Below, piece after piece: positions 25,973 through 29,421 of a stretch of DNA of 64,000 nt. The position numbers and the translations under genes are program-made. The stretch's first letter is position 1. Each line of letters starts with the position of its first letter. The DNA lies in the IMG/VR virus record IMGVR_UViG_3300032242_003291, positions 186,001 through 250,000 of that record. One strand, written 5' to 3'. The notes beneath the pieces are model-generated. The model was not told where the DNA came from and ran no database searches. It saw only the letters and a list, made by a program, of their open reading frames with translations.

Positions 25973-26527
25973 TTATTTGTTTTTAACAATTTGAATCATT
26001 CTTTTAAGACACGCAAGTTGTGCATCATCATAATTCAAAGTGGTTTCTTTATAGATTTTTCTCTTGGATGGAAATTCGTAGATTGGTATGAGATTATGAT
26101 TGATATTAGATGTAAAGGATGTTGATTCAGGTGTCACATGAATTTCATATCCATTAAAATATATCAATGGCAATAACGTAAATTGTCCTTCCAAATAACT
26201 TGATTCATCACTAATGCGAGTTATAATCATCTCTCTCAAAAACTTAAATGCTTGTTGGTAGAGTGGTGCTGATATAATTAATATCTCAGTTGTATTAAAA
26301 ATATCATTTATTGATGTGATTAGTTCATTACCTACATAATACCCAAAGCATTGCTCATCAAAACCTAATTCTTTAAGTTCTAATGCTTGTTCATATGGGA
26401 TAAATTGATTGTTCATATTATTTGTTTTTAATGTAGCATTAAAATTGTAATGTACACCACCGTTTTCGTCTTTAGTTGGTTCTATTCCTGTACCTGCAAA
26501 TAGTTCTTCAAATGTTTTAGGTTTCAT
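25973..26527 (-). CDS. hypothetical protein, probably with an internal start at 26416
   Basis: FIPYEQALELKELGFDEQCFGYY...APLYQQAF; -7 element TATCTTTG at 26557-26564. Confidence 0.7.
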   Translation of the reverse strand: MKPKTFEELFAGTGIEPTKDENGGVHYNFNATLKTNNMNNQFIPYEQALELKELGFDEQCFGYYVGNELITSINDIFNTTEILIISAPLYQQAFKFLREMIITRISDESSYLEGQFTLLPLIYFNGYEIHVTPESTSFTSNINHNLIPIYEFPSKRKIYKETTLNYDDAQLACLKRMIQIVKNK

Positions 26528-26654
26528 ATTATTTATTTTATATTACAAAACTAATACAAAGATATGATATATCCATCAGTATTTATACTGAATTTTTTTC
26601 GGGGTCGGGTTAATCTGAGATGGTCATAATGAGGGGGTGATTATATGAACCAAT

Positions 26655-26727
26655 CCGAACCACCGAAGGTGGTCGGGGACCGTCGGTCAAAAACGGGGGA
26701 AAATATCGACGAAGTCGTTTTCGTCGG
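26655..26727. repeat. cluster of GC-rich hairpins with GAA triloops
   Basis: accaccGAAggtggt and cgacGAAgtcg in a non-coding gap. Confidence 0.6.
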
Positions 26728-26757
26728 CGAATATCTGGTTAAAAGCAGAATTAATTC

Positions 26758-27057
26758 TTACTGATGCCCATATACACCATCAGTTTCAAGAACATCTTCA
26801 TTAAGTGTGTGAGCAACCCATCTCTTCATATACCAATCAACTTCTTCCACACTAAGAGAAAACATATCCATAATTGCAACCTGAATATGTTGCATATAGT
26901 TAAATTGTTTGCGGGCATAAATTAATGCGCCGACAACATAAAAATTATCATGATATAGAATAAGGTGGTTATTCTGAAGTGCAGTTTTATAATCACCGAA
27001 CCTATCCGTTATGAACTGTAGTATCAACTTTTCCATGAATTTTTTCATTTCCTCCAA
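26758..27057 (-). CDS. WF-family protein without leader
   Basis: IMDMFS...YMKRWVAHTL. Confidence 0.7.
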   Translation of the reverse strand: MEEMKKFMEKLILQFITDRFGDYKTALQNNHLILYHDNFYVVGALIYARKQFNYMQHIQVAIMDMFSLSVEEVDWYMKRWVAHTLNEDVLETDGVYGHQ

Positions 27058-27217
27058 ATTTATATCTAAGCTGAAAAAGTTTCATTATTTTATCATATTC
27101 ATCCTCGATTTCTTGCCAATATTTTTTTGCATACAAATCACCTTCCTCTGTAGCAACACCACCTAAACTTTTCAACTTCTCAACGTGTGGAAATCTATCT
27201 TCTGTTACTATATTCAT
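27002..27217 (-). CDS. tandem-array paralog (DRFPH...R.KFGG..IH)
   Basis: MNIVTEDRFPH...RYKFGGNEKIH. Confidence 0.75.
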   Translation of the reverse strand: MNIVTEDRFPHVEKLKSLGGVATEEGDLYAKKYWQEIEDEYDKIMKLFQLRYKFGGNEKIHGKVDTTVHNG

Positions 27218-27395
27218 TATGTATTTTTTTATTACCACCGATTCTAAATCTTTCCAAAGTATTTTCCATAATGAAATCAGATTCTATGATAAATTCCGAA
27301 TAGTTGTCATTATAATACTTTTCCGCTTCTATAGTTTCACCCAACTTCATTAAATTATAATGGTGCGGGAACCTATCTTTGTTTGCTATTGTCAT
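27195..27395 (-). CDS. tandem-array paralog
   Basis: DRFPHH...RFRIGGNKKIH. Confidence 0.75.
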   Translation of the reverse strand: MTIANKDRFPHHYNLMKLGETIEAEKYYNDNYSEFIIESDFIMENTLERFRIGGNKKIHNEYSNRR

Positions 27396-27585
27396 TATGA
27401 ATTATTTTATTACCACCAAATGTTTGTCTAATTGTTACGGTTTCCACGAGGAATTCATATTCTTTATTCAACAGGTCACTATACACCTGATTATACCATC
27501 TAGCTTCATCAGTAGTTCCACCAAGTCTCATCAATTCTTTATAGTGGGGGAATCTATCTTTATTTGATATTGTTGCTATTGTCAC
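27373..27585 (-). CDS. tandem-array paralog
   Basis: DRFPHYKEL...RQTFGGNKIIH; GTG start. Confidence 0.75.
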   Translation of the reverse strand: MTIATISNKDRFPHYKELMRLGGTTDEARWYNQVYSDLLNKEYEFLVETVTIRQTFGGNKIIHNDNSKQR

Positions 27586-27772
27586 TATTAATTATTTTAT
27601 GAATAAATTCACTTCCACCCAATTGTTTTCTAAACCTATTTTCATCAATAAGTCTATCATATTCTTTATTTATCACATATTGATTTTGTTCTGTATACAA
27701 ACGACCTTCAGCAGTTTCAGAATTACCCAAACGAAATAACTCTTTAATGTGGGGGTACTTATCTATAATCAT
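27560..27772 (-). CDS. tandem-array paralog
   Basis: DKYPHIKEL...RKQLGGSEFIH. Confidence 0.75.
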   Translation of the reverse strand: MIIDKYPHIKELFRLGNSETAEGRLYTEQNQYVINKEYDRLIDENRFRKQLGGSEFIHKIINSDNSNNIK

Positions 27773-27968
27773 ATTTAACGTATTTGTGAATAGCTTTATT
27801 TCCACCAAACTTATATCTTAATTCAACATCATATAAATCCAAGTAGTTACCACGATTTTTCATGGAAGGAATACCATACATTCCTGCTGAAAGAACAAAC
27901 TTGCGTCTCCTTATTTGATTTTTGGCATCAAGATACTTGTTCCACTGTTTTACTTCTTCTTGTTTCAT
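27759..27968 (-). CDS. tandem-array paralog (C-terminal motif only)
   Basis: LRYKFGGNKAIH. Confidence 0.7.
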   Translation of the reverse strand: MKQEEVKQWNKYLDAKNQIRRRKFVLSAGMYGIPSMKNRGNYLDLYDVELRYKFGGNKAIHKYVKYDYR

Positions 27969-28119
27969 TTTTAATTAATTCATGTATTGCTCGGTCCCCA
28001 CCCAATTTAAGTCTGAGATTATACATCTGCAATTTTTTTACAGCATCCGTCAACTCAAACCATAAAGAACCATTCGGGTTAACAAAATATAAACGTTCGT
28101 TATAACTATTCTCTTTCAT
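27928..28119 (-). CDS. tandem-array paralog (C-terminal motif only)
   Basis: LRLKLGGDRAIH. Confidence 0.7.
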   Translation of the reverse strand: MKENSYNERLYFVNPNGSLWFELTDAVKKLQMYNLRLKLGGDRAIHELIKNETRRSKTVEQVS

Positions 28120-28399
28120 ATACGCATTCAGTTGGTTTATTCTTCTCCCACATATCAAATATAAAATCCAAAAATTCGGGACCTACTGCAAAGTAATCCA
28201 AAAAGTCGTGAACAGATGCATACTCACACATTCTACCATGTTTATAATTATCGTATAATCCAATATTCACTCTCTCCCCCTCCTTATAAAAGATATTCTT
28301 CTTCGTTGCAACAAGTGTCACGGTCCCCAACTTATCTGACCTATTGGATAATACATCAAGATAACATCTTTGAAATGTGAAAAATTTATTGAAGTCCAT
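28106..28399 (-). CDS. hypothetical protein
   Basis: 97 aa, head of the array operon. Confidence 0.7.
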   Translation of the reverse strand: MDFNKFFTFQRCYLDVLSNRSDKLGTVTLVATKKNIFYKEGERVNIGLYDNYKHGRMCEYASVHDFLDYFAVGPEFLDFIFDMWEKNKPTECVYERE

Positions 28400-28848
28400 A
28401 TACTATTTTCTTTTATCCATTTTTTCATCCACAATGGTCCATACAAATATAACAACCACCATCCCGAAAAAGATAATCATTGAGTAGTCCATATTATCTT
28501 TTTTTGAATAGGTTAATAAATCCACTTATAGTTGAAAATACCAACACATAGTATAATCCAATTACAATCCATTTAACAATTTCCATAATATAATTTTTAC
28601 AAACATAGTATATTCCACAAAATTTTCCAAAAATTTTTTTTCTCGTTGGGTGAGTATAATAAAAGTGGGGGGTCATGTTCTTAAATAAGTTACCTATTGT
28701 TCTTAACTCAAGAGGTGATGCACTTAAATTGGAAATATATTTCTAAATTATTAAAATTAAATAATGACTTGTTATTTTTTAGGTTGTAAACATATAATAA
28801 TAATTTACAATTGGAAATATGTTTCTAATATTAAGTATATTTATTAGT

Positions 28849-29421
28849 ATGAGTAATTTTTTAATATATGGATTGAGATGTCCAAAAACAGATGACTACA
28901 AATATATCGGTAAAAGTAGTTCAGGATATGAAAGAGCAAAGGCTCACTTAACCTTTTCACATAATAATTCAGTTAATCTTTGGGTGAGTGAATTGAGAGA
29001 AGAAGGACTGTCCCCACTAATTGATGTCCTTGAAGAATGTGATGAAAATAATCTCACAATTAAAGAACAATTTTGGATACAATTTTATGATGATAAAGGA
29101 TGTAAATTAATGAACCACATAAAGTATGATGGTAAAGCAATTCATAAATTGAAACAAGACATTTTAATCGAACAAGAAAAACTTAATAAAGAATTAGAGA
29201 CCGCTAAAAATAATTTACAAGAGTTTTCTAACATTTCTTTATTCATAAAAAAAAGAAGAAAACAATTAAACATAAATCAAATTGACTTATCAGAAATGGT
29301 AGGTATAACTAATAGAACCCTCACCATGATTGAGAATGAAACAGGTAATCCTTCATACTCCACAATTGTATCATTGTTAGATACCCTTGGATACAAATTG
29401 GTCCCAATATTGAAGACATAA
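28849..29421 (+). CDS. GIY-YIG endonuclease with C-terminal XRE/HTH_3 domain
   Basis: LIYGLRCP...YKYIGKS...RAKAH; IKKRRKQLNINQIDLSEMVGITNRTLTMIENETGNPS; TATTTAT at 28838-28844. Confidence 0.85.
   Translation: MSNFLIYGLRCPKTDDYKYIGKSSSGYERAKAHLTFSHNNSVNLWVSELREEGLSPLIDVLEECDENNLTIKEQFWIQFYDDKGCKLMNHIKYDGKAIHKLKQDILIEQEKLNKELETAKNNLQEFSNISLFIKKRRKQLNINQIDLSEMVGITNRTLTMIENETGNPSYSTIVSLLDTLGYKLVPILKT

What the first reader, a model, noticed from the sequence alone, without database searches (positions are those of the whole stretch)
27002..28119. Tandem array of six overlapping paralogous microgenes (~190-bp period)
Seen: six ORFs end in R-x-K-[FL]-G-G-x-x-x-I-H and four start with D-[RK]-[FY]-P-H-x-x-x-L-x-x-L-G. 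Each overlaps the next by 14-41 nt in another frame, and in two junctions the conserved ATxCATAATG encodes both I-H-N of one gene and the ATG of the next. Inference: a gene accordion in which the C-terminal motif may be constrained partly as a translation-coupling signal, with diversified bodies.
Basis: partly seen in the sequence, partly recalled or inferred. Interest (0 to 1): 0.62.

Follow-up and report, generated by a model that had tools for sequence, protein, structure and literature searches.

The report
Overlapping microgene array in a freshwater jumbo phage
A 317-kb uncultured freshwater phage carries one operon of six (arguably seven) overlapping ~65-residue genes from an undescribed helical microprotein family; the odd staircase of overlaps is a by-product of how the units were duplicated, not a special coding trick, and the proteins' function is unknown.

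Summary
Six minus-strand microgenes (27002-28119) share R-x-x-[FLI]-G-G-x3-I-H near the C-terminus. Four also share D-[RK]-[FY]-P-H…L-G near the N-terminus. Neighbours overlap by 14-41 nt, always with the downstream gene in the +1 frame.

They are coding: orthologue dN/dS is 0.16-0.5 in the bodies. The family has no Pfam, PHROGs, PDB or fold match, but comprises 84 clusters of 30-95 aa proteins in metagenomes.

The staircase is geometric. Unit periods are all 3n+1. Most ORFs in the window and its relatives run past I-H into the next unit until an out-of-frame TAG/TAA made by the GAT-AGR/GAT-AAG (D-R/D-K) codons of the next unit's motif. Those tails are unconstrained (dN/dS about 1.5-1.9).

The motif is conserved at the protein level. 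Its codons vary synonymously, and synonymous sites upstream of the next start show no extra conservation.

Units group by array position, not by genome, so this is an old birth-and-death array rather than a fresh accordion. Whole units are still gained and lost by recombination at the motif; the window lacks one 187-nt unit, with the breakpoint on the Gly-Gly codons.

Promoter and start-site signals suggest a Bacteroidota host and a single operon. The function (early accessory or host-interaction proteins) is inferred only.

The parts
28600..28631 (-). Bacteroidota-type promoter match (TTTG-N-TAnnTTTG), probable operon promoter
   Evidence: 24 matches in the window against 6.4 +/- 2.5 expected, and 0 of 100 shuffles reach 24. 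This match precedes the gene block, and there is none inside the array. The same sequence is conserved in L001, read there as ...KKIFGKFC... upstream of the first gene.
28106..28399 (-). 'up', a 97-aa ORFan; conserved 5' flank of the array, overlaps g6 by 14 nt
   Evidence: It is 81% identical to the gene that precedes a differently composed array in L008. No Pfam, PHROGs or PADLOC hit.
27928..28119 (-). g6 (63 aa), a unit with the C-terminal motif only (RLKLGGDRAIH)
   Evidence: Profile E 9e-5. Orthologues are unit 'a' in L001, L004 and L007.
27759..27968 (-). g5 (69 aa), a unit with the C-terminal motif only (RYKFGGNKAIH)
   Evidence: Profile E 3e-4. Orthologues are unit 'c'.
27560..27772 (-). 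g4 (70 aa), a full unit (DKYPH ... RKQLGGSEFIH)
   Evidence: It falls in clade 'd'. A contig in run X6 lacks this unit (joint 27596->27783).
27373..27585 (-). g3 (70 aa, GTG start), a full unit (DRFPH ... RQTFGGNKIIH); the protein that was modelled
   Evidence: AlphaFold2 pLDDT 82.7, with helices 13-21, 26-34, 36-55 and 58-62. The GTG start is conserved in L001, L004 and L006.
27195..27395 (-). g2 (66 aa), a full unit; a chimera of the unit-f body and the unit-g C-terminus
   Evidence: the window lacks 187 nt present in L001 (4735-4921) and L006, and the breakpoint at window 27234/27235 lies on the Gly-Gly codons.
27002..27217 (-). g1 (71 aa), a full unit (DRFPH ... RYKFGGNEKIH)
   Evidence: It falls in clade 'h' (95/95 support).
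26758..27036 (-). 'dn', a 92-aa gene that ends the array in all close relatives (L001, L004, L006, L007); overlaps g1 by 35 nt in the +1 frame
   Evidence: It has T-D-R-F-G-D where g1's TAG lies, but the N-terminal profile does not detect it, so homology to the units is unproven.
26600..26760 (-). Conserved GC-rich hairpin element 3' of the operon, including a terminator-like hairpin at 26726-26707
   Evidence: Three compensatory pairs in one hairpin in L004. No Rfam match.

Best explanation
The region is a single operon of a 317-kb freshwater jumbo phage whose host is probably a member of the Bacteroidota. It holds a birth-and-death array of stand-alone helical microproteins of about 65 residues from an undescribed family.

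Shown:
- The units are protein-coding and under purifying selection.
- They belong to a family of at least 84 sequence clusters. All members are small proteins, found singly or in arrays.
- Every unit keeps its own ATG or GTG start.
- Unit periods are 3n+1. Most ORFs in the window and its relatives run past the functional end (…G-G-x3-I-H) into the head of the next unit, and stop at the out-of-frame TAG or TAA that the GAT-AGR or GAT-AAG (Asp-Arg/Lys) codons of the next unit's D[RK][FY]PH motif create. A few (g4, g6) end at an earlier chance stop.
- These read-through tails are unconstrained, whereas the overlapped heads of the downstream genes are constrained.
- The +1 staircase is therefore a geometric consequence of duplicating a unit that contains an out-of-frame gene junction. 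Only periods equal to 1 mod 3 keep every copy open.
- Whole units are gained, lost and exchanged by recombination within the motif DNA, the stretch most alike between units. This also places the same C-terminal module of about 15 residues on unrelated bodies.

Inferred:
- One transcript runs from the host-type promoter at about 28631-28600 to the hairpins at about 26726.
- Each unit is initiated independently, using the A-rich context supplied by the upstream unit's last codons.
- The proteins are early accessory factors that act on the host (takeover or counter-defence). The conserved R…GG…IH tail would be the shared functional element and the variable helical body would give specificity.
For: Coding and selection:
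- NG86 dN/dS is 0.24 (window vs L001), 0.63 (window vs L007) and 0.44 (L001 vs L007).
- Bodies give 0.16-0.51, with at least 99% of bootstraps below 1.
- The N-terminal heads inside overlaps give 0.15-0.91.
- The C-terminal tails inside overlaps give 1.55-1.92, with confidence intervals that include 1.
- Motif codons vary synonymously.

Family:
- 61 word-search hits.
- 84 clusters, all 30-95 aa, in an exhaustive profile search of 1.84 billion representatives.
- Distant members occur singly or in arrays with the same staircase.

Geometry:
- Frames and overlaps.
- Stops lie in GATAGR/GATAAG contexts in the window and in six relatives' loci.
- Overlaps of at least 14 nt occur at 7 of 8 array junctions against 2 of 14 flanking junctions in independent JGI gene calls (Fisher p 0.0015).

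Turnover:
- Positional orthology with units present or absent.
- A 187-nt unit deletion with its breakpoint on the GG codons.
- Unit-sized joints in contigs from other lakes.
- A conserved 'up' flank (81% identical) next to a different array in L008.

Expression signals:
- No Shine-Dalgarno signal, and A enriched at -11/-12 and -3. This matches Bacteroidota initiation as described in PMC6847099.
- Unit starts score like true starts.
- Bacteroidota-type promoters are enriched about four-fold. One lies ahead of the block and none inside it.
- Terminator-like hairpins lie 3' of the block.

Structure: a helical model with pLDDT 82.7.
Against: - There is no RNA or protein evidence; none of the 20 listed runs is RNA.
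- The function rests only on context: an ORFan-rich neighbourhood, a host-type promoter, hypervariability and a divergent HTH gene.
- No homology or fold match supports any activity.
- The host assignment is indirect.
- The metagenome joints come from short contigs laid at 80% likeness. Some have short sides (30-33 nt) and could be assembly artefacts.
- The origin of the units that carry only the C-terminal motif is unresolved: shuffling, or divergence beyond recognition.
- dN/dS estimates come from few, short, partly overlapping genes.
Confidence: 0.6

Rival explanations
1. One reading: the conserved C-terminal motif is kept largely because its nucleotides serve as a translation-coupling or initiation signal for the next microgene (dual coding).
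For: - All unit starts lie inside the upstream unit's coding sequence and still score as good starts (82nd-99.9th percentile against internal ATGs).
- The codons after G-G are A-rich (AAT AAA AAA ATA CAT AAT), which fits the A-rich leaders of this Shine-Dalgarno-less genome (PMC6847099).
- Two junctions have CATAATG.
Against: - G, I and H codons vary synonymously.
- Synonymous divergence in the 30 nt before the next start is no lower than in the body (p 0.35-0.61).
- The His codon overlaps the next start or lies up to 16 nt before it.
- R and G-G lie too far upstream, and the genome uses no Shine-Dalgarno signal.
- The motif persists in single-copy members followed by unrelated genes, and in an L012 unit separated from the next gene by a gap.
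Confidence: 0.15
2. A true gene accordion: recent amplification of one gene under strong selection, now beginning to diverge or collapse.
For: - Copy number differs among relatives.
- Unit-sized joints occur in environmental contigs.
- L007 has a lineage-specific d/d2 duplicate.
Against: - Paralogues are only 30-47% identical in protein and 59-67% in DNA.
- Units cluster by position across phages, so the duplications predate the split of these phages.
- Tandem Repeats Finder sees no array.
Confidence: 0.1
3. The units are joined into a multi-domain polyprotein by programmed +1 ribosomal frameshifting at each junction, since every junction needs exactly a +1 shift.
For: The +1 offset is uniform at all junctions in the window and its relatives.
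Against: - Every complete unit in all the loci keeps an ATG or GTG at the homologous place.
- The junctions share no slippery or hungry-codon site.
- No family member among the 84 clusters exceeds 95 aa.
- Single-copy members exist.
- The +1 offset is fully explained by periods of 3n+1.
Confidence: 0.04
4. The G-G tail is a ubiquitin- or Pup-like tag: the microproteins are processed after G-G and conjugated to targets.
For: The sequence resembles such tails: L-R-L-K-L-G-G in g6 and R-Y-K-F-G-G-N in g1/g5 recall ubiquitin and Pup C-termini (my own knowledge). The size, about 60 residues up to G-G, is also similar.
Against: - The phage genome has no Pup ligase, prokaryotic JAB or ThiF/E1 gene.
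- The fold is helical, not beta-grasp.
- Conservation extends beyond G-G to an invariant I-H. A discarded extension would not be expected to keep this.
Confidence: 0.04
5. It is not a set of genes: either a decayed repeat protein broken by frameshifts, or non-coding repeats with chance ORFs.
For: Short ORFs, no database annotation and no expression data.
Against: - dN/dS is clearly below 1 in the bodies.
- Conservation is higher in protein than in DNA.
- The frame offsets and start codons are conserved across divergent phages.
- 84 clusters of stand-alone homologues exist.
- The AlphaFold2 model is confident.
Confidence: 0.03

Closest known systems
Poxvirus K3L-type gene accordions (my own knowledge: Elde et al. 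2012)
   Same: Head-to-tail tandem copies of a small viral accessory gene, with unit number changing by recombination between copies.
   Different: Accordion copies are near-identical and change within a few passages. Here the copies are 30-47% identical, are positionally orthologous across phages, and include units with unrelated bodies.
Clusters of small early/host-takeover or anti-defence ORFans in large phages, such as T4 hyperplastic regions, the SPO1 host-takeover module, and anti-CRISPR operons with an HTH 'aca' gene (my own knowledge)
   Same: Runs of tightly packed ORFans of 50-100 aa behind a host-type promoter, hypervariable between relatives, with an HTH regulator next door.
   Different: Those clusters are mostly made of unrelated genes. 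Here one family is repeated, with a shared C-terminal module. The HTH gene is divergent, not co-operonic. No anti-defence homology was found.
Translationally coupled overlapping genes (ATGA/TAATG-type overlaps in operons; my own knowledge)
   Same: Same-strand overlap of stop and start in a polycistronic unit; one relative's junction is a classic TAATG (L001 b->c).
   Different: The overlaps are long (14-41 nt). They are set by where an out-of-frame stop happens to lie in the next gene's conserved motif, and the overlapped tails evolve neutrally.
Pup / ubiquitin-like C-terminal Gly-Gly tails (my own knowledge)
   Same: A basic/hydrophobic-G-G sequence near the C-terminus of a protein of about 65 aa.
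   Different: G-G is internal (5-21 residues follow the His), I-H beyond it is invariant, the fold is helical, and the genome has no ligase or protease partner.

Membership tests
Gene accordion (poxvirus sense) | Tandem head-to-tail copies of one gene | tested here: met
   g1-g4 are mutual homologues (E 3e-8 to 6e-21) in direct tandem.
Gene accordion (poxvirus sense) | Copies near-identical; expansion recent and lineage-specific | tested here: not met
   30-47% protein identity. Units cluster by position, not by genome. No TRF array.
Gene accordion (poxvirus sense) | Copy number changes by recombination between units | tested here: met
   A 187-nt unit indel with its breakpoint at the GG codons; 4-6 full units among relatives; unit-sized joints in contigs (weaker).
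Translationally coupled overlapping genes | Same-strand overlap of upstream stop and downstream start | tested here: met
   Overlaps of 41, 14, 26, 23, 23 and 35 nt (the last from the 92-aa gene start used).
Translationally coupled overlapping genes | Downstream translation depends on upstream translation | not testable with these tools
   Needs reporter or ribosome-profiling experiments. No RNA run holds the locus.
Dual-coding initiation signal within the C-terminal motif | Excess conservation of synonymous sites upstream of the next start | tested here: not met
   dS in the 30 nt before the next start equals dS in the body (p 0.35-0.61). Synonymous codon variety at the motif. Power is limited (60-80 codons).
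Programmed +1 frameshift polyprotein | Conserved shift site and absence of independent starts | tested here: not met
   No shared slippery site at the junctions. ATG/GTG is kept at the homologous place in every complete unit of the loci examined. No member exceeds 95 aa.
Ubiquitin/Pup-like modifier | Cognate ligase, E1 or JAB peptidase encoded alongside | tested here: not met
   PF03136, PF14464 and PF00899 are absent from the 317-kb genome, with positive controls working. A host-encoded partner is not excluded.
Ubiquitin/Pup-like modifier | Beta-grasp fold (ubiquitin) or a terminal GG[QE] (Pup) | tested here: not met
   Helical model. G-G is followed by a conserved x3-I-H and 5-21 further residues.
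Any curated protein family (Pfam, PHROGs, PADLOC) or solved fold | Significant profile or structural match | tested here: not met
   - No Pfam or PADLOC hit.
- Best PHROGs hit has E 0.0012, to a family of unknown function.
- PDB by sequence: E >= 1.8.
- Foldseek: no match at E <= 0.001.
- VIA-align: best Z 4.0.
- ESM Atlas: TM <= 0.43.
Anti-CRISPR/aca-type operon | Small ORFans co-transcribed with an HTH regulator | tested here: inconclusive
   An HTH_3 gene (28819-29421, E 8e-13) lies adjacent but is transcribed divergently. Inhibitory activity cannot be tested here.

The most novel reading that the evidence does not exclude
The R-x-x-[FL]-G-G-x3-I-H tail is a portable C-terminal module that recombination at its own DNA grafts onto unrelated small bodies. 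At least five body types carry it in this phage clade. The array would then be a cassette system that directs a changing set of microproteins to one common partner, such as a host machine, a phage enzyme or the virion. The overlap staircase would be the scar of that cassette exchange.
Probability: 0.2. Interest if true: 0.7.

Novelty: new variant of a known kind. Interest (0 to 1): 0.42.

Why it matters
The finding adds an uncharacterised microprotein family, seen only in uncultured phages and mostly in freshwater samples, to the 'dark matter' of jumbo phages.

It also gives a clean, testable account of how a staircase of long out-of-frame overlaps can arise and persist without selection on the overlap itself. 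Three things suffice: a duplication unit that contains a gene junction, periods of 3n+1, and stops fixed by a conserved Asp-Arg/Lys codon pair. This is a useful caution for reading overlapping genes as adaptive dual coding.

If the shared C-terminal module proves to be a docking or targeting tag, the array would be a natural cassette system for diversifying small host-directed proteins. It would then be a good entry point for finding new phage-host interactions in Bacteroidota.

Tried and rejected
- **Tandem Repeats Finder:** no array.
- **The search for related loci:** With g3 alone it found nothing in viral contigs.
- **Phage GenBank records:** tblastn found no match. blastn gave only two short hits, outside the array, to huge uncultured phages.
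- **Family and structure libraries, nothing usable:** Pfam, PHROGs and PADLOC; PDB by sequence; Foldseek against PDB and BFVD; VIA-align wide (best Z 4.0); ESM Atlas by features and by shape.
- **Alternative genetic code:** rejected. Code 11 gives 91% coverage by ORFs of at least 100 aa, and recoding any stop does not lengthen the long ORFs.
- **GGTGG as a Shine-Dalgarno element:** rejected. The genome has no SD signal and G is depleted upstream of starts.
- **Ubiquitin/Pup-like tag:** no partner enzymes in the genome.
- **'dn' as a seventh unit:** it has D-R-F at the expected place, but the N-terminal profile does not detect it, so this is left as unproven.
- **C-motif-only units as frameshifted derivatives of full units:** no relic of the N-terminal half in any other frame.
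- **Motifs elsewhere in the genome:** only two chance-level hits (E 0.04-0.06).
- **Other tandem micro-families in the genome:** none.
- **Complex prediction on g3 with g2:** no verdict (score 0.02). This counts neither for nor against binding.
- **Literature searches:** found no description of this family or architecture.
Full report
**Setting**

The window is bases 186001-250000 of a 317,259-bp virus record rated complete. GC content is about 31%.

The standard code fits. ORFs of at least 100 aa cover 91% of the genome, and reading any stop codon as sense does not lengthen the long ORFs.

The genome lacks Shine-Dalgarno signals. Upstream of 232 long ORFs, G is depleted, A peaks at -11/-12 and -3, and TAAAA occurs in 32% of leaders against 6% background. 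This is the pattern described for Bacteroidota (PMC6847099).

The Bacteroidota promoter form TTTG-N17-23-TAnnTTTG occurs 24 times in the window against 6.4 +/- 2.5 expected. Near-identical or related DNA is found in freshwater, lake and aquatic metagenomes from 13 studies, and none of the listed runs is RNA. A freshwater jumbo phage of a Bacteroidota host is therefore the best reading. It is an inference.

**The observation**

Six minus-strand ORFs are present exactly as described:

| Unit | Coordinates |
|---|---|
| g6 | 27928-28119 |
| g5 | 27759-27968 |
| g4 | 27560-27772 |
| g3 | 27373-27585 (GTG start) |
| g2 | 27195-27395 |
| g1 | 27002-27217 |

- All six end in R-x-x-[FLI]-G-G-x3-I-H followed by a short tail.
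- g1-g4 also begin with D-[RK]-[FY]-P-H-x3-L-x2-L-G.
- Successive genes overlap by 41, 14, 26, 23 and 23 nt.
- The next gene, 'dn' (26758-27036, 92 aa), overlaps g1 by 35 nt.
- At every junction the downstream gene lies in the +1 frame, and all stop-to-stop periods (169, 199, 187, 178, 193) equal 1 mod 3.

The paralogy is significant. Among g1-g4, blastp gives E 3e-8 to 6e-21. A profile built without g5/g6-type sequences still finds g6 (E 9e-5) and g5 (E 3e-4), and nothing else, among 4305 ORFs of the genome.

At the DNA level the repeat is faint. TRF reports nothing. g1-g4 are 59-67% identical, and g5 and g6 share only the motif.

**Are these genes?**

Yes, by four lines of evidence.

1. Independent gene callers call the same overlapping small genes in related contigs.
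2. Orthologue comparisons give dN/dS of 0.24, 0.63 and 0.44 overall and 0.16-0.51 for the non-overlapping bodies. At least 99% of bootstraps fall below 1.
3. The family is large. A word search found 61 proteins. An exhaustive profile search of 1.84 billion representatives found 84 clusters, all 30-95 aa. All conserve [FY]-P-H … L-G-G-x2-T-x-E-G-x2-Y … E … R-x3-G-G-x3-I-H. R53 and H63 are invariant, and P13, E42, G57 and I62 nearly so.
4. AlphaFold2 with 88 sequences gives pLDDT 82.7. The model is a small helical bundle (helices 13-21, 26-34, 36-55), with the motif forming a G-G turn and a short helix at 58-62.

No curated family, solved structure or predicted structure resembles it. No cultured phage carries it.

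**Why the staircase?**

In the window and six related loci, most upstream genes stop at a TAG or TAA lying in GATAGR or GATAAG. These are the Asp-Arg or Asp-Lys codons of the next unit's D[RK][FY]PH motif read one base out of frame. Such an ORF runs past its conserved end and terminates where the next unit's conserved motif supplies a stop. A few, including g4 and g6 in the window, end at an earlier chance stop.

Where a relative uses GAC for Asp, the tail simply runs on to the next chance stop (L001 unit e, 41-nt overlap).

Selection agrees with this. Codons of the downstream head inside overlaps are constrained (dN/dS 0.15-0.91). The same nucleotides read as the upstream tail are not (1.55-1.92, CI includes 1).

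Because each repeat contains such an out-of-frame junction, a duplicate stays open only if the period is 1 mod 3. That accounts for the uniform +1 progression without any selection on it. The same staircase appears in a distant array (L012).

Long overlaps are concentrated in the array: 7 of 8 junctions against 2 of 14 flanking ones in L001 (Fisher p 0.0015).

**Is the motif a coupling signal?**

Mostly not.

- Codons at the conserved residues vary synonymously across 27 distinct versions: second Gly GGA 12, GGT 7, GGG 5; Ile ATT 13, ATA 9; His CAT 22, CAC 5.
- Synonymous divergence in the 30 nt before the next start equals that of the gene body in three comparisons (p 0.35-0.61).
- The His codon overlaps the next start or lies up to 16 nt before it.
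- Single-copy members followed by unrelated genes keep the motif.

Something of the idea survives. All unit starts have contexts typical of true starts in this genome (82nd-99.9th percentile against 5354 internal ATGs). The A-rich codons after G-G therefore do provide a usable leader. A small dual role cannot be excluded with 60-80 codons of data.

**Accordion or old array?**

Related phages carry the same ordered series, a(g6)-b-c(g5)-d(g4)-e(g3)-f(g2)-g-h(g1)-dn, with whole units present or absent: b, g, d2, a2, x, y and z. In a maximum-likelihood tree the units group by position (supports 87-95%), not by genome. Only d/d2 in L007 is lineage-specific. The duplications are therefore old.

Turnover nevertheless continues, and it happens at the motif.

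- The window lacks exactly 187 nt relative to L001 and L006. The breakpoint falls on the Gly-Gly codons at 27234/27235, so g2 is the body of unit f joined to the C-terminus of unit g.
- In L004 two extra units sit between h and dn, and the original tail of h has moved to the last of them.
- Contigs from two other lakes show joints that skip 186, 321 and 383-395 nt or replace units. These come from short contigs and are weaker evidence.
- A more distant relative keeps the 5' flank 'up' at 81% identity but has a quite different array behind it.

The locus is thus a hypervariable island evolving by birth and death. The motif DNA, the stretch most alike between units, serves as the recombination site. 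This also explains why at least five unrelated body types carry the same C-terminal module. A search for frameshifted relics of the N-terminal half in those bodies found none.

**Operon context**

A Bacteroidota-type promoter lies at 28631-28600 and none lies inside the array. The block then runs through:

1. two tiny membrane-like ORFs;
2. 'up' (28106-28399);
3. g6 to g1;
4. 'dn';
5. a conserved GC-rich hairpin element (26600-26760), with a terminator-like hairpin at 26726-26707 and three compensatory pairs in one relative.

A Cro/CI-type HTH gene is transcribed divergently at 28819-29421. The neighbouring genes are ORFans. Transcription as one unit from a host-type, hence probably early, promoter is inferred, not shown.

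**Function**

Nothing identifies an activity.

- The proteins are not markedly acidic, so a DNA-mimic role has no support.
- The Gly-Gly tail resembles ubiquitin and Pup tails. However, the genome has no Pup ligase, JAB peptidase or E1, the fold is helical, and conservation continues past G-G.
- A complex prediction for g3 with g2 gave no verdict.

My committed reading is that these are early accessory proteins acting on the host (takeover or counter-defence), with the R…GG…IH tail as the shared functional element and the variable body giving specificity. I put this functional part at roughly 0.3. The architectural and evolutionary account stands at roughly 0.85.

**Verdict**

This is a new protein family in an unusual but explicable arrangement, which makes it a new variant of a known kind (tandem multigene families of small accessory genes in large phages). 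Interest is moderate.

Noticed in passing
window 26600-26760 (minus strand); L001 5396-5555, L006 1913-2076, L007 4458-4617, L004 2364-2524: A GC-rich non-coding element of about 140 nt, nearly invariant, lies just 3' of the operon in an AT-rich genome. It has several hairpins, and one shows three compensatory pairs in L004. The fold z-score is -2.5. It has no Rfam match. It may be a terminator/stabiliser cluster or a small RNA.
   Followed up: partly
window, 24 sites (e.g. 23-54, 411-442, 28600-31, 48762-93, 50137-68, 56806-37): The Bacteroidota-type promoter consensus TTTG-N17-23-TAnnTTTG is enriched about four-fold, often in the form TTTGGTG…TTATCTTTG. Together with the lack of Shine-Dalgarno sites, this points to a Bacteroidota host.
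   Followed up: partly
window 28494-28676 (minus strand): The listed 60-aa ORF probably starts at the internal ATG at 28586 (M-E-I-V-K-W…, a 30-aa hydrophobic peptide), because its 5' part is the promoter sequence. A second hydrophobic micro-ORF lies at 28403-28525.
   Followed up: no
window 28819-29421 (plus strand): A 200-aa protein with a C-terminal Cro/CI-type HTH_3 domain (E 8e-13) is transcribed divergently from the array operon. It may regulate the operon.
   Followed up: no
L008 2200-3500; L004 1438-1780; L005 2930-3266: Relatives carry further unit types that share only the …G-G-x3-I-H or …[IV]-H ending, including g6-like bodies with N-P-[DN]-G … L-[NT]-D. In L008 the array behind a conserved 'up' gene has entirely different content.
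   Followed up: partly
window 26345-26424: Short blastn hits (78-84% over about 70-80 nt) to two huge uncultured phage genomes (LR756500, LR756502). They lie inside the 184-aa ORF 25973-26527.
   Followed up: no
genome C1 255377-262153 and other sites (outside the window): The genome holds 19 other small paralogue groups, for example three adjacent large genes at 255-262 kb. None is a tandem micro-gene array like this one.
   Followed up: no
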